Source of the DNA: Antechinus flavipes
Taxonomy: Eukaryota
DNA length: 64,000 nucleotides
Reading direction: 5' to 3'
Assembly (NCBI RefSeq): GCF_016432865.1
Contig: NC_067402.1
Coordinates: forward strand, 219,480,001 to 219,544,000
The notes below the pieces were generated by a model. It searched no databases. It saw nothing but the letters and a program-made list of their open reading frames with translations, and was not told the origin of the DNA. This document shows positions 18,904 through 56,200 of the stretch, piece by piece. Each line of letters begins with the position of its first letter. The first letter of the stretch is position 1. The position numbers were made by a program, and so were the translations under genes.

Positions 18904-20127
18904 ATGAAGTGGGAGCTGCTATGGCTGGAATGTCTCCTTCCCATAATGGTGGCAGGAAAGTCTGTGAAACTAGTGGATGAGGAGGAGGCTTTGGTGAGTG
19001 TTAGTTAATGGTAAGGGGAAGACCTTGGGTTTTGCAGATGGGGCAGCTTTTGCCCCAAAATTTCCATTTACTCCCTACTTCTCACCTTCTTTCTAATCTT
19101 CCCTCTTTCCACTGTTCTGTCTTCTCGCTAATCTTGATTTGCTCTTCTCTTCTTTCTTTTCTCTCCCCTTCTGCAATATAGTTTTCTCCATCTTTCCTTT
19201 TTGTTTCCCTATGGATTTTGTTTGATCAGTCAGAAGACGCCTGAGCTCTGATGCCATAAATTGAAGGAGAGGTAGAAAGATTTTCCTTAACTAGGAGTTC
19301 CCTTCACCAATAAAATTGCAGATCCATTCCTTATTGCTGTCCTTCCTAGGATTACCTTGTAAAGTATGGATACCTTCAGAAGCCTCTGGAAAGAATGACA
19401 GATGATTTTGAACCAGAAGAGGTGGCAGAAGCGATAAGGTAAGAGATAAAGAAAGGAAATGTTGGCAAAGTAGCATGTTATGATCCTCAGCTATAAAGCA
19501 CTGAGGAAGAATATTGGTGTTAAATATATGGGCAAATTATCTATTTACCTATCTATATGTAGTGTGTGTATATATATATATGTATATATGTATACTCTAC
19601 ATACCTATGTATAGATAAATAAATGATCGATAAATACATAGTGAAGAAGGAAATGGGAACAAGTATTTATTAAGAATGAAAGTGTCAGGCATTGTTCTAA
19701 GCACTTTATAGATGTTGCCTTATTTGATTTTCACAACAACTTTGTGATGTAAGATTATCCCCATTTTACAGTTGAGGTAACTGAGGCAGACAAAAATTAA
19801 GTGACTCATACTAATAAAAATTAAGATAGTAAGTGTCTGAGGCCAGATTTGCGCTCTGATCTTCCTGACTCCGGGCCAGTGCTGTATCCATGGCACACCG
19901 CCTAACTGCCAAAAGAGAGNNNNNNNNNNNNNNNNNNNNNNNNNNNNNNNNNNNNNNNNNNNNNNNNNNNNNNNNNNNNNNNNNNNNNNNNNNNNNNNNN
20001 NNNNNNNNNNNNNNNNNNNNNNNNNNNNNNNNNNNNNNNNNNNNNNNNNNNNNNNNNNNNNNNNNNNNNNNNNNNGGGGAGAGGGGAGGAGAAAGGGGGA
20101 GTGGGGAAGAGAGGGGAAGAGAGTGAC

Positions 20128-20171
<44 letters not shown>

Positions 20172-23100
20172 GGGGGAGGGAGGGATGGAAGGAGGGAGGG
20201 AGAAAGTGGAAAGGAGAGAGGGAGAGAGATACAGGTTCCTTAATGCAGCATAGTCCATTTTTTTCCTTTGATTCCATTCTGGGTTTAGCAGTGCCTGAGT
20301 TCATCCACTTTCTCCCAGTCCAGGCCAAGAAATACTCATTGACTAATCCATAGAATTAAAGATGAGGGGGAAAAAAAGCAAAACAACTTTAGAGGGGATG
20401 GAGTTCAATTCAGAACATTAACAAGTATTCCAGAGTATCAAAATCACAGTCTTTCACAGTTCAAAAGGATCTTAAGGATTATCCAGTTCAACCTCCTTCT
20501 TCATTTTTAAAGTTGAAGATATACATAATTGAAGGGCAGAAAACATGCTCTAAGGTTATCTCTGAAAGCAGCTGGTAAGATTGGAATCCATTTTCTCTGC
20601 CTCCCAACTTTTAAAAAAAAAAATCTCTGTGTTGACTCTTCAATGACCTTCAGCTACCCTGTTCCTCATCTTCTCCCCACTTCCAGTTAGACTTTGGTAG
20701 AATTCAGTTCAGGAAGTAAGGTGAGGAAGAGGAGGAAAAGAAATACAGATCTGAAGAGGAAGAGTATGATCCAGAAGAGAATGTTGCGTATGGCCGGCAA
20801 CTCTCATAGGAGAATCTTTAGAGGAGGGTTAATCTAGATCAAGGGACAAGATGAAGAGGCTATGGCTTTAGAGAAAAGAAAGTTGCTTAGACATAAAGGG
20901 GAATTTTATCCAAGTCAGAAAGAGCTGGAAATGGAGTCTATGATAGGAGACTGAACATTTCCTTTTTTTAAAGGACACAGAAAAGAATCTCTTCCTCAAC
21001 CCTCAACTATATGGACTAAAGGCAAAAACCAAAACAAAACAAAAATGCAATGATCCTCAGACTTTCTATATTGGATAACAATGTCTCAAGCAGCAAGTAG
21101 CATAATACTGTCAACCATATCATCCTCTTTACCCAAATGGGTTTCCCCTCTTTTTTTTCCCCAGGTCCTTCCAGGAAGCTTCAGAGCTGCCAGTCTCTGG
21201 GGAGTTGGATTGGGTAACAAGGGCACGAATGAGGCAGCCCCGCTGTGGTCTGGAGGATCCTTTCAACCAGAAGACCCAAAAATATTTGCTTTTAGGTGAG
21301 GGTTGAAGTTCAGAAGGGAATGTGGAAGGTAGAGTGAGGAACATTGTAAGCTATGGGATGGGGAGAGATGGACTGACCACTAAGCTTAAAATGGTTCTGA
21401 GTTGACTCTGAAAGGACACAGGGACTTGAGTTTCTCTCTCTCCATCCCTGTCTGGATTGGTAAGAACATTTGATTTCTGATTCATATCCAACCTCCCCAG
21501 GTCGTTGGAGAAAGAGGCATCTAACATTCCGTATTTTGAATTGGCCATCTACCCTCCCAGTCCACATTGCCAAGACAGCCCTGCATACTGCCTTCAGATA
21601 CTGGAGCAGGGTGGCCTCCCTGAGCTTTCGAGAGGTTCGGGCAGGCTGGGCAGATATTCGTCTCTCCTTCCATGGCCAAAACAGCGCCCATTGCTCACAA
21701 GGTTTTGATGGACCTGGTAAGTCCCTGTGACCTTTGATCTTGTCTCCTCTCATCAGCAGATTGTGAACTTGATCATCATTCTCCCTCTTCTTTATGTTCT
21801 TCAACTTTTTCCTATTAGTTCTTTCCCTGTCTTCCACCATGCCCAAATCTATCCTAGCCTTAAAAAACCTTCACTAGGCCCTACCATATCATCTAAACTA
21901 TTATCCTATATCTCTCCTCCTTTCAGTCAAATTCATAAAAAAAGCTTTCTACATTTCTTGCCTCTACTTTCTTTCCTCTCACTCTCCAAATGTTTGCATT
22001 CATCAGAAACTATTTCTCTATAGTTACCAATATTATTTACCAAATATGATGGTTTTCTTTTTTTTTTTTTAAAGTCCTCATTCTTCTCATTTTGTCTGCT
22101 CCATTTGACACTGTGGACCATTCTCTCTTCTCTGGGTTTTTGTGACATTACTTTCCACAGTTTATTGCAGTGCCTAGTATGTGAAGGTACTTGATAAATT
22201 CTCTCTCTCTCTCTTGCATTCTCTGTCTATCTGTCTGTCTGCCTCTTTCTGTCTCTGTCTCTCTCTTTCTCTGTCTCTGTCTCTTCACTCTTATTCTTGC
22301 TCTCCTGCTCTGTTTCTCTCTGCCTCCTTCTCTGTGTTCCTCTCCCTTCCAATCTCACTATCTCTTTGTCTCTGTCTCCCTCTCTTTTTAAAAATCTTTT
22401 TATTTTCAAACACATGCATAATTTTCAACGTTCACCCTTGAAAAATCTCGTGTTCCAAATTTTTTCTCCCTTCCTTCCCCCAAGTAATCCAATATATGTT
22501 AACTATGTATAGTTCTTCTATAATATTTCCATAATTATCATTCTAGACAGGAAAAATCAGATCAAAAAGGAAAAAAAGTAAGAAAAAACAAAAAGCAAAC
22601 AAACAACAAAAAGAGTGAAAATGATATCTATATTGTGATCCACACTCAGTCCCCCCAGTCCTCAATCTGGTGCAGATGGATCTCTCTCCCTCTCTTTCCT
22701 TCAGTCTCNNNNNNNNNNNNNNNNNNNNNNNNNNNNNNNNNNNNNNNNNNNNNNNNNNNNNNNNNNNNNNNNNNNNNNNNNNNNNNNNNNNNNNNNNNNN
22801 NNNNNNNNNNNNNNNNNNNNNNNNNNNNNNNNNNNNNNNNNNNNNNNNNNNNNNNNNNNNNNNNGTCTGGCTCTCCTCCTATGTCTGTTTTTTTCTCAGT
22901 ATCCTTGGCAGGACCTAGGTCACACAACTAACTAATTGGGAGTATTCTAGGTTCTGTCCAAGCTCCCTTCTTTTCTCTATTCTTAGATAGTTATCTTATC
23001 AATTTCCATGAGTTTAAGATTTCCAGATCAATAGATTCAGTTTTAGCATCCTTTTGAACTTCAGTCCCATATTACCAATGACCTATAAGACATTTCAAAC

Positions 23101-26100
23101 TAAACATGTCCCAAAAAACCTCATCTTTCCTTTCAAACATACCCCTCTTCCAAATTTCCAGTTTTTGCCAAATGTGGTGTAATAATAACAGCTAGAATTT
23201 ATTCATGTTACAAATATTACCTAATTTTATCCTCATAACAACTCTGGGAGATAACTGTTAATATTATATCCAGTTTATAGGAGATGAAAGAGGAACACAG
23301 AGGTTAAAAGGCTTGCCTGGGGTCAGGTCCTTCTCCTATTCAGTAAACTATTTTAAATGCCGTGTTATTGCCTCTAAAATAAAATATAGACTTCTTCCTT
23401 CAGGGCCTTTTAAGGGCAATTACAATCTGGCCCTATCTTTCCATATTCATTGGATACTTCTTCCTGTCTCAGTCTCCATGATCCAGCCAAATGGTCTTTG
23501 TTTCTCATACGTCATGACTTTCCCTTCTCCATTCCTTTGGATTAGCTAATCCTCCCATGTCTGGAATGCCCTCTTTTTTTACTTCTGTCTTCTAGAGATG
23601 TAGATATAGATGTAGAGACTTTTACATGAAGTCCTTCTTGATTATCAACTACTTGTGTCGTCCTTCTTGTCACCTTGTATTTATTCCTATTTATTCTGTA
23701 CATCCGTATATACATTATGTCTATATTTCTATTTTTCTCCTTGTTGTGTGCTGTTTTAGAATATAAACTGTTTGCTAGTAGGGATTGTGGTATTTATTGT
23801 ATTTATATCTCAAATAGCTGATTTTATTAAGTACCAGTTTAGTCTATGAACTCCTTACATTTGTGTGCATTGCTCCCCTCCCCCTGATTATCTCTCCCCC
23901 TTTTGACAGCTTCCTAAAGCTCCCTTGGGCTCCTTTTCTACATTCCCATTGAGTTGTCTTGTCTGCAAGCTCTTTGAAGGACTACATCTTGCCTCTTTTT
24001 TGTATTCTTGCCACTGAGCACAGTGCCCGACACATAGTAGGAACTTAATGGATAGTGAATGATTGATTGATCCTTTCTTTTCTAGACACAGGATAGCATT
24101 ATGGAACGAGTCCTACATTTGGAGTTAGAAGGGTTAGATTGGACTCTTGGCTCCCCCATGTACTACCTGTTGAGGCCTCTGGGTGGTCTTGGCCTTGAGT
24201 CAGGAAGCCCAGAGGACAAATCAGGCCTCAGGTAATGGTGGTGAGACTGAACTTCTGTTTGCCTCACACTTCCATCATCTGTAAAATGAGGGTAGTAATA
24301 ACACTTACCTTCTAGGATTGTTGTGACGATCTAATGAGATATTTTGAGTGCACTTAATAAGTACCTGGCAAATAGTAGTTGCTATATAAATACCCTACTA
24401 CCTGGACCTTTGGTTTCTTTTTCTCTGAAATGAAGAAACTGATCTGAAGGCCACATAGACTCCAGTGCCACATCCTTTGAGCCATGTCTTTCCCCCAGAG
24501 GACACTTTTGAGGTTTGGGATGGGGATGGAGATCATAAACAAGACTTGGGGGATTAACTAGAAGATCTTGAAGGGATGGAGAAATGAGAAGACTGGAGGG
24601 CAATTATATATTTAAACTCAACAGTTACTAAATTCCCCTTTCTCAATGCTCTGTGCCCAGGAAAAGTCTTAGCCCATGCTGACATCCCTGAGTCGGGCAG
24701 TGTGCACTTTGATGAATCAGAGAAATGGACAGAAGGGACCAAAATGGGGGTGAATCTTCGCATCATTGCAGCTCATGAGCTTGGCCATGCACTAGGATTA
24801 GGCCATTCCCGATACCCACAGGCTCTCATGGCACCTGTTTATTCTGGCTTCCGACCTCACTTTCAGCTTCATCCCGATGATGTGGCAGGGATTCAGGCCC
24901 TCTATGGTAAGTCTCTCCTTTTCACTCCCAAGTGTTTGCTTCTCCAAGTGTCCTACTTCAGTGAATATTCTCTTTCCTCAACCCCCCCAAATAGGACTCT
25001 TTTTTATAATGAGATGTTTCTAGGAATAACATACCTTGGCTCCCTCTTACCCAATCATTGGGATCCCCTTTCCTTTGGCTTTAACCTTGTGTCTGCAGTC
25101 TTTTAAGCCCAGTGCCCTCAATTTCCTTATTGGGAATAGAAAGTATTTTATTATTTTAGTTATTTAACTTTTTCCCACTTCCTGATATCCCAAAGTCATC
25201 AGATTTTCTTTGTTTTTGTTTCTGTTCGAAGCCAAAATGGACTTTTTATCCTTTCCCAGGATCTCTAAGCAAATGATAGGGAGAGGATCCTTAGAACTTT
25301 GTATCTCACATGTGGTATCTTAAATGCCTTTCCTCCAGCCCTGATGTGTATTTAATTTGCAGGCAAGAGGATCCCTCCCAGTGGAGAGGAGGAGGAGGAG
25401 GAGGAGGAGAGGAAGGGAATGAAGTTTCCATTGTAACCCCAGGGCCCACAGTGCCTGGAACTAGGCCTGACCCCTGCAGTGGAGAGCTGGATGCCATGAT
25501 GCTAGGTAAGCTCCTCCCCCCTTGAGGATAGAGTTCAGTAAAATGGCTCAGACCATTTATCCCTAAGGACTGGAAAAATGGGAATGATTCAGGGCTGCCT
25601 TGGAAGGTAGAACTCCATACCTCTAGAATGAACACATGTGGAAAGGGTGGGGGAGGGAGTGTTCTGACTTGTGATTTCATCTGTGTATGGGATTTCTGGT
25701 GTGAAAATTCTCTTTACTGCTACAGATCTGTTCAAATGTAACTTATTGTGCCAGAGAGGCCTGGACATTGATAAATGAAATGATTTGCAGAATATGTGTC
25801 CAAGCATTGCAGAATATGGTCTTGCCAGGCTCCAGGGTTTCCTGGCTCTGAGGCTGGCAGCCTTTTCATTATCTACAGACTGTCTCTCACTTGTTTTGAA
25901 ATAAACTTTGAACTTCAGATAGGGTGTGTGTGTGTTTGTGTATGTGTGTGTGTGGACTGGACCTGGCTTTGCTTTTTCACTTTCACCCATCATCCCTTCT
26001 TCAGGCCCTTATGGAAAGACATATGCCTTCAAAGGAGACTACGTATGGACGGTGACTGGTTCCAGACTGGGGCCCCTTTTCCATGTGGCAACTTTATGGA

Positions 26101-27234
26101 AGGGGCTGCCAGGGAACCTGGATGCTGCTGTCTACTCTCCCCGTACAAAATGGATCCACTTCTTTAAGGGTGAGGAAGGAATAAGGTGTTTTTAAAAAAG
26201 GGAATAAAGTCTGTTTTAAGAAGATAAAGATTTGGCATTTGAGCTTTTCTAGGGGAAAAAGGGAGAAGTCCAGATCTATGGTTTTCTTGGTATAGGGAAC
26301 TCCCAGTATGGAAAACTCCTTTCATTGTTGTAGACTAGTATCTTTTCTGTTTTAGCTATTGTCTTAAAGAGTTACCAGGAGGCACTGAGAGATTTAGTGC
26401 CTTAAAATCATAATGCTAGTTTTTGTCAGGGGTAGTACTTGAACCCAGGTCTTTCTGATTCTATTAGATCCTCTCTCTGATTCCCTGGAAAATAAAGAAA
26501 AATTGTGAAAGGAAGGGATAAAGATATACTGAAGGCCTTTTCCTCTCTCCCTAATCTCTTTAGGCAATATGATCTGGCGCTATATGGGCTTCAAACTGGT
26601 CCCTGGCTTCCCTAAGCGGCTAAGAGATGTGGGACCCAACTTGGATGCAGCTCTGTACTGGCCCCTCAACCAGAAAGTTTTCCTCTTCAAGGTACAAAAT
26701 CTTTAACTTTGTAAAAGTATAAGTGCCTTAACGGGAGGGACTGTTTTTTCTTTAGGGCTTTGCTTTGCCAATAAAGGGAATTGGCATTCCCTTTAGGAAT
26801 AGTGATGGTGGTGAGGAAATCCTTTCCCAGTGGAAATACAGCATCCTTAAAAATACTTTTTAAGGGGGAGGGGCTGCTGCCCTGGAAAGGAGAACTACAA
26901 AGGTGCTGCAGGAAATTCTTGACACTTTTTCTTTTATTCTTAGGGCTCTGGGTATTGGCAGTGGGATGAATTGGCAGTGAATGATTTCAGCCGTTACCCC
27001 AAGCCAATAGGAAAGCTGTTCACTGGAGTGCCGGACAAGCCCTCTGCAGCTTTGAGCTGGCAGGATGGCAAAGTCTACTTCTTTAAGGGTAAAAAGTACT
27101 GGCGCCTGAACCAGCAGCTCCGAGTGGAGAAAGGCTTTCCCAAGGACACTTCTCAGCACTGGATGCACTGTCTCCCTCCAACCATGGATATCTCAACCTC
27201 AACCACCATTTCCACCCCAATAACTGCCCACTGA
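18904..27234 (+). CDS. MMP19: Matrix metalloproteinase-19, 9 coding exons: join(18904..18993,19350..19438,21165..21295,21501..21716,24661..24906,25363..25505,26005..26169,26564..26691,26944..27234). Exon 6 is 143 nt and breaks frame as assembled.
   Basis: All introns are GT-AG with compatible phases except exon 6. Signal peptide [18 protein letters not shown]; [12 protein letters not shown]; cysteine switch PRCGLED; zinc motif [11 protein letters not shown]; Met-turn ALMAPVY; hinge [14 protein letters not shown]; hemopexin blades ([39 protein letters not shown]); TGA at 27232-27234. Exon total is 1499 nt, i.e. 499 aa if one base is restored. Confidence 0.97.
19660..19910 (-). mobile_element. 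MIR/Mar1-type SINE in MMP19 intron 2
   Basis: ccccattttacagttgaggtaactgaggc core and aagtgtctgaggccagattt...cctaactgcc head. Confidence 0.75.
19920..20075. other. Assembly gap (156 N)
   Basis: N run. Confidence 1.
20076..20230 (+). repeat. (GA)n / G-run polypurine tract next to the assembly gap
   Basis: Direct reading. Confidence 0.9.
22200..22385 (+). repeat. (CT)n/(CTGT)n polypyrimidine microsatellite, followed by an old L1 3'UTR (-) at about 22385-22690
   Basis: Direct reading. The L1 3'UTR matches copies at about 11160-11460 and 50330-50640. Confidence 0.85.
22709..22864. other. Assembly gap (156 N)
   Basis: N run. Confidence 1.
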
Positions 27235-33269: not shown

Positions 33270-33430
33270 AAAAAAGTGATGAGAGAGAGGGGCCAGGAAG
33301 AGGGAGGGAGGAAGGGAGAGAGGAAGAGAGAAGGGGAGAGGGAGAGGTAGAGGGAGAAGGAGAGAGAGAGAAAGAGAGAGTGAGAAAGAGAGGAGAGGGA
33401 GAGGGAGAGAAAGACAGACAGACACACACA
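33270..33430 (+). repeat. GA-rich polypurine microsatellite in the TMEM198B 5' intron
   Basis: Direct reading. Confidence 0.85.
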
Positions 33431-33928
33431 CTTCTGGAGACCCAGAGAAAGAAACAAGGACATAGAAAGTCTGTAGGACTACAGATCTTACAGCTTTTTG
33501 GAGCCTTGTCTAGGATCAGATCCTGGGACAGAGTTGTTGGAGAGAACAGTGCCGTTGCTCTAAGATCCCTCTTCCTTCTTGTTCCTGTCTGAATGGGCAC
33601 TCTGCCCACTGGCACCCCATGTCTTAGCATAAATCCCCTTTGACCAACTCAGGATGGCATTCTTCCCGTTCTCCCCCCTTTGCCAGTACATTGTACAAGT
33701 TGATAGAACTAATGAGTACCTTGAATAGGGACAGAGTTTAAAACGGGTTTGCATTTGGGGGCACTGGGTCTGGGAAGAATGTATTCCTTCCTTGCATTTG
33801 GTTATCAAAGTTCTCAGCCAGCTGCAGAAATCGGAGCCTCCAGCTCCGGACTTCCCACCCCATCCCCCTTCTGATGTCTGGGGCTTCCATCCTAGGACAG
33901 GATGGGAAGTGGGGCAGCAATTACTCAC

Positions 33929-35830: not shown

Positions 35831-35914
35831 CAATTTGACGCCTCCCTTTTGTTGCAGGCACCTGAAGTCTTCATGATGGCTGTGACCTAAATTCCTTCAG
35901 GAAGCCCCGGGGTC

Positions 35915-38900
35915 ATGGCCCAGCAGCACCCCGGGGAAAGGAAGTTATACAGGGCACCCCACAGTGGCTCTTCAGTTTGGACTTCAGGGCCCACTGTGGG
36001 CCCCGACAAACTTTCATTCTCAGGATTTGGGGACTCGGTGGAGGCTGCACCCAATGGTACCTATTGCCTTACAAGACATCCTTGTGACACAAATTCACCT
36101 CCCCAGAGCCCCACCCACCAATCGGATCCAAGCCAAGGCACTCCAGGGGACCCAGGACCCCCTGGGGAGGGAGAAGACCTTGATCAGACTGAAGCATCTT
36201 CAGAAGAGGAAACGGGAGTGGACAAGGAACTTTCAAGGGACAATGGGGCTGGGGACCTGGAGGACAGGGACTCTTCCATCCCACCTGTACCATCAGTCTG
36301 TAATTGTCAGGGAGCTCCCAGTGTCCCTGAGGGGCCTTTCTCTGAGGGAGGAGATGGTTCATTTAGTAACTTTTGCACCTGCTGTACCCCCCCAGCCCTG
36401 GGAGAAGATGAAGATGATGAGGAAGGGTCCTCCAGGGTTCCCAGTGACCCTTCTCCTGTGTCCAGTGGAAAAAAGCCTCCACCCAAGAGGCAGCGGCATC
36501 GTATGCCAACCAAAGAGGAGCCTAGGGAGAGTGGTCGAAGAGACCCCCGGGCTTCCGGTCGACACCGATCTGGCCGGAAACGGAGCCAGGCAGACCGGCG
36601 TCGGTATTTGGTGGTGTGGGGATCAGAGGAACTGTACCGACTGGGGCAGAAAGGGTTCTGGTGGCTAATTGAATTGTTGGTGTTGGTGGGGGAGTATGTG
36701 GAAACTGGTGGGCACCTTATCTATTCTTGTGGACAGTTGAGAGGCAGTGATCTAGATCTGCTTCGAGTATGGGTGGGAAGCTGGGTAGGGCAGTTGGGGA
36801 GCTGGGCTCAGTTGGGGTTCCTGTGTCTGTGCCGGGGACTTTGCTATGGGGCAGGGCTTTTTTCCCACCTGCTCCGTCTCCTGTGTGCTGTGCTACTATT
36901 GGTTCTGGCCTTGCTGTTGGGCTGTCTTCAGCTGAGCTGGCGAGTTTTAGTGTGTATGGGAGATCGATTGGGTTGGCGGGCTCAGGCCTCCTGGCTTATC
37001 TCCAGGCTGGATTCACCTGTTGTACACCGATGTTGGACTTACCTCAAAGAAAGCAGGACATGGCAACAGTTGGTGGGGCTGGTGCAGAGGGGTTGGCTGG
37101 AGATTCCTTGGGTCAAGCAGAGGATCAACAGGCAAGGGGATGGCCCAGCATCTAGTGGGCGATACTGCCAACCTGGAGAGGAGGTGTCTCGGCTCTTGGC
37201 CATGGCTGGGATCCCAGAAGATGAGCTAAACCCCTTCCAGGTTCTAGGGGTAGAAGCCACAGCATCAGATATAGAACTGAAGAAGGCATATAGGCAGCTG
37301 GCAGTGATGGTAAGTATTTCCCTTGTTCCCTGCCCCATTTTAGTTGTTTTCTCCTGGGTAGAGAGAATGGGATGGTTGTGTGTAATTTCATGGCAGAAAG
37401 TTGAGGGGGAGCGCAGTTTAATTCTCGGTAACTCGTCATTATTGCCCCAATTGGTGGTTTGGTTTCTTGTCTTGTTTTACTAGTTTTTAAGGAGTCATTC
37501 AGCCATATTGCCAGTGACCTGGGTGATCAAGCAAGGGAGACTTCAACACTTGGAAATTTAGTCTGTTGGTATTTCATTTTCATTGAGATGTGAAAATAAT
37601 TTGGAATAACAATGGGAAAACAGTGAGAAAAGGGGAGGTGCAAAAAGGATTGAGCTTAAAGAAGAGGAAGTTGAAGAATAGGTAAATAGGAATTTTTTAA
37701 AGGAGGTATGAAATGGAGGAAGATGATCAATATTTTGCTTGTTCCATTTGGAGGGAATGAAAAATTAGTCAAAGACATTTGAGGAGCAGGTTTAGGCATG
37801 AGTATTCTCCATTTATCTTATGAGAGAGGATTAGATGAACTAACTAGAGTTGTCACATCTTTGGGAAGTGTTTTAATATATGTGATTTTCCCAACTTTCG
37901 TCATGGAATCATTTTGGCTTTGAAACAGGAATTTGATTCTTCACCCTCTTACTTTGTAGGTTCATCCTGACAAGAACCACCACCCCAGGGCTGAGGAGGC
38001 CTTCAAAGTGTTGAGGGCTGCCTGGGATATTGTCAGTAATCCTGAGAGACGGAAAGAATATGAGATGTGAGAAATGGAAAAAAAAAAAAATTGCCATACA
38101 AGGGTGGAGTGTGTCAGAAGCAGAGAGAGGGCCCCGTGACTGAGGAGAGTAGGCTGTTCCTTGACTTCTGTTGCTGGTCAAAGAGAAGTATGGTACATCT
38201 AGGGCTGGAAGGGATCCCAGAGGCCATCTAGTTTAATCTCCTTAAAGATGGATAACTGAGATTAAAAGATGACTTACTCAAGGATTTTCTTATTTTTCTG
38301 GAAGTGCCCTGAGGCTATACCATACCTCTTTTTTACCCCAGGAAACGAATGGCAGAGAGTGAGCTGAGCAGGTCAGTGAATGAATTTCTGTCCAAGCTGC
38401 AGGATGAACTCAAAGAGGCCATGAATACTATGATGTGCAGCCGGTGTCAAGGGAAGCACAGGTGAGAAATGTGAGGGGGGGAAATGTCAGAGATGGAAGG
38501 GCAGTATAGCTTAGCGATAGGACAGTTGAGGTTTTCCCTTTAAAGCTTTTTATGGCTTTTTGTAAAGATTTGGAGTTAGTGGTTGTGAACCAAAGGAAGA
38601 AAAGTAATTTAATTACTAATTAGAAAGAAATGTGGCTCCTGGACATGTCTAATGATTGGTATCATTGTAACAAATAGTTTGTTAAAGTCAAAATATGCCT
38701 TGGCTACACTCAGGGTTAATGTGGGGGTTTTTGTGTTGGATGACAGGAGGTTTGAAATGGATCGAGAGTCTCAGAATGCTCGATACTGTGCTGAGTGCAA
38801 TAAGATGCATTCTGCTGAGGAAGGTGACTTCTGGGCAGAGTCAAGCATGTTGGGTCTCAAGATCACTTATTTTGCCATGATGGATGGAAAAGTATATGAC

Positions 38901-53200: not shown

Positions 53201-56200
53201 TGTGTGTGGGGGGGTGGAAGTGAGAGGTAGGGGGTGCTGTTCTTTTAATGACGTTGGACTTCAAGTAAGACATTAAACTCCTGAGCTCTATATGNNNNNN
53301 NNNNNNNNNNNNNNNNNNNNNNNNNNNNNNNNNNNNNNNNNNNNNNNNNNNNNNNNNNNNNNNNNNNNNNNNNNNNNNNNNNNNNNNNNNNNNNNNNNNN
53401 NNNNNNNNNNNNNNNNNNNNNNNNNNNNNNNNNNNNNNNNNNNNNNNNNNNNNNCAAATTTATAAGAGAATGGTGATACCATGTAAGAATGGTTTAAAGC
53501 AACTCCCTTTATCTTAACTTTGGTCTAGGATTCCTCCAGATGCCCTTCAGTTTCTAGTTTGATTAACTGGGCACAGTTAAATAGGGCAGAGCTAAGTTAT
53601 AGTCAGCAGGGGGCACCTCTTGCCTAACTCAGAGTATAGGGTGTTCTGACAAAAGGGTGGAGGGGAGGAACGAGTTCCTGTTCCAGAATTGCTTCCTCTG
53701 AAAATGTCATTAAACCATTACTACCTTTCAGGGCATCAAATGGGAAAACTGTCCAGGAGACTGGAACAAAAGCCGCCCATGCCTCTAAATAAGGGACCTT
53801 AATGAGGCTGGTTATGACCCACAGTTTTATGGGAGTTGTTTGGTGGAGCGTTAATGCCCTTCCATTTATCCTGGGTACTTCCGAACTTTGTCTCCCGCCC
53901 CTCTGGTCCCCCCGCTTTTGTTTTCTCTCTTAAACCTTTTGACCAGAGACTCAGCCATGTTTTCCTAAGACAAACTGACCTCCGCCTCCTTCCTCCTAAT
54001 TCCCTTTGGCATTTTCATTTGTCCCACTTCCAGGGTTCCAGCTGGAGTTGTAAGCCTCTGAGAAATGGGGAAAACAGACCTTATGGAGTGTACATATGAG
54101 TTGTGATGTCAAAAGCAATAACTGATATCAAGAAAATAGTTATTAGGTCAAAAAGGAATGGAAAGGTTCTTAGAACAAGGGTAATGATCTCTGGTGTGTT
54201 GCTATGCATGTTTCTTTTCAAATTCCTGAAAAAGGGATCTTTTCTGATTTAAATTATTATATTTTAGTTATCTGCCATGTCATTTTGTCTTTTCAGTGGG
54301 TGGCAGACCCCCAAATCCATATTGGAAATGTCAAGTGTCAATCATAGTGTCTAGTTATAGATTATCAGGATTTTAAAATTTGTTCTTTTCCTTCCCCTCC
54401 AGGGCAGCAGAGAAGAAGGTAGTGAAAATCACATCTGAAATACCACAGACTGAGGTAAACATTTTTCTCTGTTTATCTCCTTGTTTATCTTTTTGGGAAG
54501 CAGTCTTTTTATTTTATATTCCCTCATTCCATTTGTGTTTTCTTTCACCCTTTATTTTTAGGTTGAGAAATGGTATAGTTTCTTTATATCTTCCTATCCT
54601 CTCAATTTCTCTTGTACATTTCTTGTTTAATAGCTTATGGGAAAATATTTGGATTTTTCTGTAGGACAGTTAGTCTTCTGTTTTCTAACATTATGGATTC
54701 AATGGCAACCACATAAGATCTAAGCATCCATTATGTGATCTGTGTATGTGCACATTTAGCGAGTTCCTGCTATCATGTATGCTTGCTAGCCTATATGTGT
54801 TTGTGTGTGCTTGTGCGCATGCACAAGGTAATTGGGGTTAAGTGACTTTTCCAGGATCATACAGCTATTAAGTGTCATGTTTCTGAGGCCAGATTTGAAC
54901 TCAGGTTCTCCTGCCTCCAGAGCTGGTGCTCTATTAACTGTGTCACCCAGCTGTCCCATTATATGCTCTTTTGGTCAGATGTAGTCCATCTTACTTTGGG
55001 ATGTAATTTGCCTGAGATTTTCTGTAAAAAAAAAATATTGGTCTGATAAATTTAGCACATATGAACCTAGTAGGCCAATAGAACCTTCCTTACTACTCTG
55101 ATACTGCTGTATCAACTAACTGTTGGTTTGCCTAGTGTCATAGTAGCAAGTTCGAATCAGTTATTGTATTTGTAAAAAATGCACAAAACTTGTACATACA
55201 TTTTTGATCTTTTGGCTGACTAAAAAAAAAAAAACCGGTGTCCCCTAACTCAAGGTACTAGAGGCCAACAGCTAGGGGATTGAATTTATGAGAAGTGGTT
55301 GGTAACAAATTTAGTCAGTTGACTCCAAGGGGATTTCTTTTCTTTTTTTTTTTTTTAAATTTAATTTTATTTAATAATAACTTTGTATTGACAGAATCCA
55401 TGCCAGGATAATTTTTACACAGCATTATCCCTTGCAATCACTTATGTTTCGTTTTTTCCCCTCCCTCTCTCCTCCCCCCCACCCCCAAGATGGTAAGCAG
55501 TCCTATATATGTTAAATATGTTGCAGTATATCCTAGATACAATACACATTTGCAGAACCGAACAGTTCTCCCGCTGCACAGGGAGAATTGGATTCAGAAG
55601 GTAAAAATAACTCAGGAAGAAAATCAAAAATCAAATAGTTCACATTCATTTCCCAGTATTCCTTCTTTGGGTGTAGCTGTTTCTGTCCATCATTTATCCA
55701 ATGAAACTCAGTTAAGTCTCTTTGTCAGAGAAATCCACTTCCATCAGAATACATCCTCATACAATATCGTTGTCGAAGTGTATAATGATCTCCTGGTTCT
55801 GCTCATCTCACTTAGCATCAGTCCATGTAGGTCTCTCCAAGCCTCTCTGTATTCATCCTGCTGGTCATTCCTTACAGAGCAATAATATTCCATAACATTC
55901 ATATACCACAATTTACCCAGCCATTCTCCAATTGATGGGCATCCATTCATTTTCCAGTTTCTAGCCACTATAAAAAGGGCTGCTATAAACATTTTGGCAC
56001 ATACAGGTCCCTTTCCCTTTTTTAGTATCTCTTTGGGGTATAAGCCCAATAGAAACACTGCTGGATCAAAGGGTATGCACAGTTTGATAACTTTTTGGGC
56101 ATAATTCCAGATTGCTCTCCAGAATGGCTGGATTCGTTCACAACTCCACCAACAATGCATCAGTGTCCCCGTTTTCCCGCATCAAGGGGATTTCTTTAAA

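What the first reader, a model, noticed from the sequence alone, without database searches (positions are those of the whole stretch)
25363..25505. MMP19 hinge exon is frameshifted in a (GAG)n poly-Glu tract, yet a tandem acceptor 5 nt downstream would restore frame
Seen: from the canonical acceptor (ttgcag|GC AAG AGG, 25363) the exon reads GKRIPPSG-E8[12 protein letters not shown] (TAA 25434-25436). The conserved [14 protein letters not shown] is in another frame, and the exon is 143 nt where 144 is needed; one G is missing at the end of the GAG run (~25410). An AG at 25366-25367 gives a 138-nt in-frame exon that reads the repeat as poly-Gly (EDPSQWR-G7-EEGNEV). Known: MMP19 has an acidic Glu-rich hinge, so the Glu frame is ancestral. 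Inference: three options - (a) an assembly indel (most likely), (b) a real null or 281-aa hemopexin-less enzyme (stop is 69 nt before the junction, so NMD is predicted), or (c) a real slippage allele compensated by acceptor shift, turning an acidic linker into a Gly linker.
Basis: partly seen in the sequence, partly recalled or inferred. Interest (0 to 1): 0.7.

Follow-up and report, generated by a model that had tools for sequence, protein, structure and literature searches.

The report
One-base gap in MMP19 hinge exon
The matrix-metalloproteinase-19 gene of this dasyurid marsupial is intact and under selection except for one missing base in a GAG repeat of its hinge exon. This is most likely a consensus error of the long-read assembly, not a new protein form, but no sequencing reads could be examined to prove it.

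Summary
Exon 6 of 9 of MMP19 (25363-25505) is 143 nt between two phase-1 introns. From the normal acceptor it reads GKRIPPSG-E8[12 protein letters not shown] (TAA 25434-25436). The conserved [13 protein letters not shown] lies in the next frame. An AG at 25366-67 would give a 138-nt in-frame exon that reads poly-Gly.

Ten other marsupial species all read GKRIPPSG, then an acidic run of 7-12 residues, then G(N/E)E.../PDPC in one frame. Their exon lengths, where seen, are 135, 141 and 150 nt. The window alone is one base short, at 25407-25412.

On this lineage the exons after the shift carry 8 synonymous and 2 non-synonymous changes (omega about 0.07). An old null or a long-standing hemopexin-less enzyme is therefore excluded.

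The +5 AG is simply the conserved Lys codon, and it is one of 14 frame-restoring AGs in this purine-rich exon. It has A at -3 and lies behind an unchanged CAG. A better bypass exists: the internal acceptor at 25440-42 gives a 63-nt exon and matches brushtail-possum isoform X2.

My estimate is assembly or consensus error about 0.68, and a real recent allele about 0.3. Within that 0.3, rescue by the +5 acceptor is about 0.03.

The scan had noted this same stretch once before (s1-192133).

The parts
18904..18993 (+). MMP19 exon 1 coding part (from the start codon)
   Evidence: tblastn of Sarcophilus MMP19 residues 1-30, 97% identity
19350..19439 (+). MMP19 exon 2
   Evidence: tblastn residues 31-60; acceptor context
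21163..21297 (+). MMP19 exon 3 (approximate ends), propeptide with the cysteine switch PRCGLEDPF
21500..21718 (+). MMP19 exon 4 (approximate ends), first half of the catalytic domain
   Evidence: Pfam Peptidase_M10, E 3.8e-14; tblastn
24661..24906 (+). MMP19 exon 5, zinc site [11 protein letters not shown]; ends in phase 1 (..TAT G|gtaagt)
   Evidence: (Peptidase_M10, E 8e-29)
25363..25505 (+). MMP19 exon 6 (hinge), 143 nt, out of frame
25366..25367 (+). AG of the proposed +5 acceptor; it is the AG of the conserved Lys codon AAG
25386..25409 (+). Uninterrupted (GAG)8 tract; relatives have shorter or interrupted tracts
25407..25412 (+). Place where one base is missing compared with every relative (GAG-AG-GAA where relatives have GAG/GAA-GAG-GAA)
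   Evidence: alignments A4 and A5
25434..25436 (+). Premature TAA in the Glu frame, 69 nt before the exon end
25440..25442 (+). Internal CAG acceptor. The exon 25443-25505 (63 nt) is in frame and gives [14 protein letters not shown]... It is homologous to the junction of Trichosurus isoform X2.
25466..25504 (+). Conserved [13 protein letters not shown] (first Cys of the hemopexin disulfide), in the frame after the shift
26005..26169 (+). MMP19 exon 7, hemopexin blade 1, intact; phase 1 at both ends
   Evidence: 100% identical to the Sarcophilus protein
26563..26691 (+). MMP19 exon 8 (approximate ends), intact
26944..27234 (+). MMP19 exon 9 coding part with the stop codon, intact

Best explanation
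The gene is a normal, functional MMP19 orthologue. The single missing base at 25407-25412 is most likely a consensus error of the assembly inside an uninterrupted (GAG)8 repeat. One plausible route is that two alleles differing by one GAG unit were merged into a length that fits neither, which short-read polishing then failed to correct. In the animal the exon would be a multiple of 3 long. It would be spliced at 25363 and read GKRIPPSG, then about 9-10 Glu, then [11 protein letters not shown]...[14 protein letters not shown], as in its relatives.

Shown: the sequence, the ancestral frame, the uniqueness of the defect, and the selection on downstream exons. Inferred: that the defect is an artefact, and the way it arose.
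For: 1. Both halves of the exon match the relatives perfectly at the protein level, each in its own frame. KRIPPSG+Glu lies before the shift. [31 protein letters not shown] lies after it, one residue different from Sarcophilus.
2. The defect is a single base. The other eight exons are open and 90-100% identical to Sarcophilus MMP19.
3. Lineage-specific changes are 16 synonymous to 6 non-synonymous overall. After the shift they are 8 to 2, omega about 0.07, P = 1.8e-4 against neutrality.
4. Relatives vary in this tract only by whole codons: 135, 141 and 150 nt, and 7-12 residues in 10 species. A 1-nt change is not the natural mode of change for this repeat, whereas it is the typical long-read consensus error.
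5. If the genome is Antechinus flavipes, as earlier notes say, it was built from PacBio continuous long reads with wtdbg2 and one Pilon round using 50x short reads (PMC9290055).
6. Unchecked leads: first readers noted many other isolated 1-nt deletions in conserved genes of this genome, including PIAS3, TTC31, AFTPH, STK36, CRYBG1 and ACP7.
Against: Pilon with 50x reads should correct most 1-nt errors in a 28-nt repeat. Earlier follow-ups in this genome judged some exon frameshifts to be real (ICAM1, IKZF4). By my own recollection, MMP19 tolerates loss of function in mouse and man, so a segregating null allele would not be strange. No Antechinus MMP19 protein appeared among the hits or cluster members. 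There is therefore no independent gene model that shows a full-length reading.
Confidence: 0.68

Rival explanations
1. A real, very recent 1-nt deletion allele, heterozygous or recently fixed. Splicing at 25363 gives an mRNA with a stop 69 nt before the last-but-three junction. It is mostly removed by nonsense-mediated decay, or at best makes a 281-aa enzyme without the hemopexin domain.
For: This is the sequence as assembled. The acceptor region is identical to that of Sarcophilus, so the same CAG should be used. Some frameshifts in this genome were judged real by earlier follow-ups (unchecked).
Against: Strong purifying selection on the downstream exons means the lesion cannot be old. The prior for a true frameshift in any one gene of one animal is several-fold lower than for a residual indel in a polished long-read assembly (my estimate). 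Triplet repeats slip by 3 nt, not 1.
Confidence: 0.22
2. A real frameshift, with function kept by a short-hinge isoform. The internal acceptor at 25440-42 gives a 63-nt exon ([14 protein letters not shown]...) that skips the repeat and the shift altogether.
For: The site has C at -3 and 7/11 pyrimidines, as good as the canonical site. It is conserved in all four species aligned. Trichosurus isoform X2 differs from X1 by exactly the 26 residues before this site. This route would explain the continued selection on the hemopexin exons.
Against: No RNA evidence in this species. In Trichosurus X2 is a predicted minor isoform, whereas the assembled transcript contig L004 carries the full 141-nt exon. 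The route needs the deletion to be real in the first place.
Confidence: 0.06
3. One reading: a real slippage allele rescued by a shift of the acceptor to 25368. This gives a 138-nt exon whose repeat is read as Gly7 instead of Glu.
For: The frame is open from 25368 to the exon end. By my own recollection of in-vitro work on 3' splice-site choice, two AGs 5 nt apart can compete in the second step of splicing.
Against: The AG is the conserved Lys codon, present unchanged in relatives that do not use it. It has A at -3, A at +1 and only 5/11 pyrimidines, and an intact CAG|G lies 5 nt upstream. The acceptor shows no remodelling compared with Sarcophilus. The shift would replace the conserved KRIPPSG by EDPSQWR. 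Fourteen AGs in the exon restore the frame, so this one is not special.
Confidence: 0.03

Closest known systems
MMP19 of other dasyurids (Sarcophilus harrisii XP_003772208.1, Sminthopsis crassicaudata XP_074126179.1)
   Same: Same nine exons and 90-100% protein identity per exon. The acceptor and first 45 nt of the hinge exon are identical. The motifs are the same: [19 protein letters not shown] and the hemopexin blades.
   Different: Their hinge exons are 135 and 150 nt and in frame. The window has 143 nt, with a longer, uninterrupted GAG run and one base too few.
Trichosurus vulpecula MMP19 isoform X2 (XP_036617757.1)
   Same: It uses an in-frame acceptor inside the hinge exon at the conserved ..ACCCCAG|GGCCC, which is present at 25440-42 of the window.
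   Different: In Trichosurus it is an extra isoform beside an intact full-length form. Here it would be the only full-function route if the frameshift were real. Its use in this species has not been shown.
Tandem (NAGNAG-type) alternative acceptors
   Same: Two AGs a few bases apart at one intron end (my own knowledge of the class).
   Different: The spacing is 5 nt, not 3, so in a normal gene the second site would break the frame. No evidence of use. The second site is AAG behind a CAG.
Residual single-base indels in short-read-polished PacBio CLR assemblies (the cases that NCBI flags as LOW QUALITY PROTEIN)
   Same: An isolated 1-nt deletion in a low-complexity run, within an otherwise intact and constrained gene. 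The reported assembly method fits.
   Different: Not verified here with reads.

Membership tests
MMP19 orthologue (matrixin, M10A) | Propeptide cysteine switch PRCG | tested here: met
   PRCGLEDPF in exon 3; aligns to the same motif in P0012
MMP19 orthologue (matrixin, M10A) | Catalytic zinc motif HExxHxxGxxH in a Peptidase_M10 domain | tested here: met
   [11 protein letters not shown] in exon 5; Pfam PF00413, E 8e-29 and 3.8e-14
MMP19 orthologue (matrixin, M10A) | Hemopexin domain after the hinge | tested here: met
   PF00045 hits in exons 7, 8 and 9
MMP19 orthologue (matrixin, M10A) | Closest to named MMP19 proteins over all exons | tested here: met
   tblastn of Sarcophilus MMP19 covers residues 1-496 in nine blocks: 90-100% identity in eight, 76% in the last. 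The profile search returns MMP19 of many vertebrates.
MMP19 orthologue (matrixin, M10A) | One open reading frame through the acidic hinge | tested here: not met
   143-nt exon; stop at 25434-36. Whether this holds in the animal is not testable here.
MMP19 orthologue (matrixin, M10A) | Conserved neighbourhood (DNAJC14 downstream) | tested here: inconclusive
The 530-aa open frame at 35891-37480 gives only a sub-threshold DnaJ hit.
Unitary pseudogene / long-standing truncation | Relaxed constraint and further lesions downstream of the first one | tested here: not met
   No other lesion. Downstream changes are 8 synonymous to 2 non-synonymous, omega about 0.07, P = 1.8e-4.
Tandem alternative acceptor rescue | Junction reads that use the second AG | not testable with these tools
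Tandem alternative acceptor rescue | A second site at least as good as the first, or signs that the site was remodelled | tested here: not met
   AAG|A with 5/11 pyrimidines against CAG|G with 7/11. The region is identical to Sarcophilus.
Assembly indel error | Reads of the assembled animal disagree with the consensus | not testable with these tools

The most novel reading that the evidence does not exclude
The 1-nt deletion is real and fixed in this species, and MMP19 function is kept by a shift in splicing. Either the +5 acceptor turns the acidic Glu linker into a Gly linker, or the animal relies wholly on the 63-nt short-hinge isoform. This would be a natural case of a frameshift in a coding triplet repeat being buffered by acceptor choice.
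Probability: 0.07. Interest if true: 0.5.

Novelty: not a real feature. Interest (0 to 1): 0.15.

Why it matters
If it is an artefact, the main value is practical. This gene model, and probably many others in this assembly, needs a one-base correction from reads before any claim of gene loss in a semelparous marsupial is made.

If it is real, it would be a young loss-of-function or isoform-switch allele of a matrix protease with mild knockout phenotypes. That is of modest interest, except for the small chance of rescue by acceptor shift.

Tried and rejected
I went on with other tools, as the message said.
2. Word search with the 76-aa open frame across the exon, looking for independent contig-level ORFs of this species: no hit.
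3. The exhaustive search with the last exon gave mostly multi-blade hemopexin proteins and only a fish full-length MMP19, P0012. One hit, P0006, looked like a primate or human C-terminal fragment and was left aside unused.
4. A first alignment of all exon pieces with P0012 was misaligned by MAFFT (A1) and was dropped. A2, with four well-aligned exon rows, was used instead.
Exons were handled one by one, by reference.
6. Trichosurus X2 is not on record as a gene product. Genomic DNA of Trichosurus and Petaurus was too large to fetch, so a Trichosurus transcript contig (L004) was used instead.
7. Old pseudogene: rejected on the substitution pattern.
8. A second, compensating indel inside the exon: rejected, because the 5' part is base-for-base identical to Sarcophilus.
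9. A literature search for MMP19 together with Antechinus found nothing.

Full report
**What is there**

The window carries a complete nine-exon MMP19 gene on the + strand. A tblastn of the Tasmanian devil MMP19 protein (P0375) places residues 1-496 in nine blocks between 18904 and 27276. Identity is 90-100% in eight blocks and 76% in the last. Pfam finds Peptidase_M10 in exons 4 and 5 and Hemopexin in exons 7-9. The cysteine switch PRCGLEDPF and the zinc site [11 protein letters not shown] are present.

- Exon 5 ends ..TAT G|gtaagt at 24906, in phase 1.
- Exon 6 runs from ttgcag|GCAAGAGG at 25363 to CTAG|gtaag at 25505, which is 143 nt.
- Exon 7 starts at 26005 and needs one base from exon 6. 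Exon 6 must therefore be a multiple of 3.
- From 25363 the reading is G-KRIPPSG-E8[12 protein letters not shown], with TAA at 25434-36, 69 nt before the junction.
- The conserved [13 protein letters not shown] lies in the next frame.
- An AG at 25366-67 gives a 138-nt open exon reading EDPSQWR-G7-EEGNEV.
- Tandem Repeats Finder reports a period-3 array at 25386-25413 with an indel.

**Relatives**

The word search with the open frame across the exon found nothing. I then ran three steps:

1. An exhaustive search with the last exon.
2. A profile search in which each exon was a separate row beside a fish MMP19 (A2).
3. A search with the sugar-glider protein, followed by a cluster listing.

These gave MMP19 proteins of ten other marsupial species, including two dasyurids (Sarcophilus, Sminthopsis).

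In the alignment of hinge regions (A3), every one of the 11 proteins reads GK(R/G)..., an acidic run of 7-12 residues, G(N/E)E..., then PDPC.GELDA.MLG in a single frame. The window matches the first half in the Glu frame. It matches the second half, one residue different from Sarcophilus, in the following frame.

**DNA level**

Genomic loci came from two Sarcophilus assemblies and from Sminthopsis. A brushtail-possum transcript contig was also used (L004). Hinge exons in these are 135, 135, 150 and 141 nt, all multiples of 3.

The window is base-for-base identical to Sarcophilus from 33 nt before the acceptor into the repeat. All relatives end the tract with GAG/GAA-GAG-GAA-GGG. The window has GAG-AG-GAA-GGG. 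One base is absent at 25407-25412, which can be described either as a G of GAG or as the A of the GAA seen in Sarcophilus.

The window's tract is an uninterrupted (GAG)8. The relatives' tracts are shorter or interrupted. The two Sarcophilus assemblies agree with each other.

**Age of the lesion**

I polarised codon changes with Sarcophilus and Sminthopsis, exon by exon. The window's lineage shows 16 synonymous and 6 non-synonymous changes. In the exons after the shift the count is 8 to 2, omega about 0.07, binomial P = 1.8e-4 against neutrality.

The hemopexin part has therefore been under purifying selection for nearly the whole time since the split from the devil lineage. A long-standing null or hemopexin-less enzyme is excluded. 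What remains is an artefact, a very young allele, or a bypass.

**The proposed rescue**

- The AG at 25366-67 is the AG of the conserved Lys codon and is present in all relatives, whose annotated proteins start the exon at the upstream CAG.
- Its context is AAG|A with 5 of 11 pyrimidines, against CAG|G with 7 of 11.
- AG makes up 8% of dinucleotides in these exons, and 14 AGs in this exon would restore the frame. The existence of one is expected by chance.
- Using it would replace the conserved KRIPPSG.
- By my own recollection of work on AG competition at 3' splice sites, an AAG 5 nt behind a CAG can get some use but loses to the CAG.

It has C at -3 and 7/11 pyrimidines, and gives a 63-nt in-frame exon. 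It is conserved in all four species aligned. The annotated Trichosurus isoform X2 lacks exactly the 26 residues before it.

**Error or allele?**

Indirect arguments favour an error:

- It is a single 1-nt loss in a repeat that otherwise changes only by whole codons.
- Both halves of the exon are perfectly conserved.
- The constraint on the gene is intact.
- If earlier notes are right that this is Antechinus flavipes, the assembly was made from PacBio continuous long reads with wtdbg2 and one Pilon round at 50x (PMC9290055).
- First readers noted many other isolated 1-nt deletions in conserved genes of this genome. These are unchecked leads.

A heterozygous 3-nt length difference in the pure (GAG)8 could explain why polishing failed. 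This is inference.

Arguments against an error:

- Pilon usually corrects such sites.
- Earlier follow-ups found some frameshifts in this genome to be real.
- No Antechinus MMP19 protein is in the collection to show how annotators read the exon.

**Verdict**

| Reading | Estimate |
|---|---|
| Assembly or consensus error | about 0.68 |
| Real recent null allele | about 0.22 |
| Real allele buffered by the short-hinge isoform | about 0.06 |
| Real allele rescued by the +5 acceptor (poly-Gly) | about 0.03 |

Interest is low unless reads show the 143-nt form.

**Housekeeping**

- The species name rests on earlier notes. I verified only that the locus is a dasyurid MMP19, about 92-93% identical in DNA to Sarcophilus and Sminthopsis around the exon.
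- One search hit (P0006) looked like a primate or human fragment and was not used further.
- N runs in the window were left alone.

Noticed in passing
window 25440-25505: Conserved internal acceptor (ACCCCAG|GGCCC) that gives a 63-nt in-frame version of the hinge exon. It matches the junction implied by Trichosurus vulpecula MMP19 isoform X2, so a short-hinge MMP19 isoform may be a general marsupial feature.
   Followed up: partly
window 25386-25409 versus L001:8475-8500 and L003:9004-9045: The acidic tract is a pure (GAG)8 here. It is interrupted by GAA in Sarcophilus and by AAG in Sminthopsis. Tract length varies from 7 to 12 residues among 11 marsupial species, always in frame.
   Followed up: yes
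window 19920-20075, 22709-22864, 53295-53454: Three N runs of 156, 156 and 160 bases. Two lie in MMP19 introns and are flanked by purine-rich or CT-rich simple sequence.
   Followed up: no
window 27175-27234: The Ser/Thr-rich C-terminal tail of MMP19, after the last Cys, is the least conserved part: 76% identity with gaps to Sarcophilus over the last exon. Its length differs among marsupials (proteins of 496-531 aa).
   Followed up: no
protein collection: MMP19 proteins of ten marsupial species are on record, but none from Antechinus. Either that annotation is not in the collection, or the gene has no protein model there, perhaps because of this frameshift.
   Followed up: no
window 35891-37480: A 530-aa open frame on the + strand with only a sub-threshold DnaJ hit at its end (residues 448-473). 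It is probably the large first coding exon of DNAJC14, the usual neighbour of MMP19.
   Followed up: partly
window 33283-33462 and 20076-20200: Purine-rich GA/GAG simple-sequence blocks that translate as Arg/Glu/Gly runs. They are low-complexity DNA, not genes.
   Followed up: no
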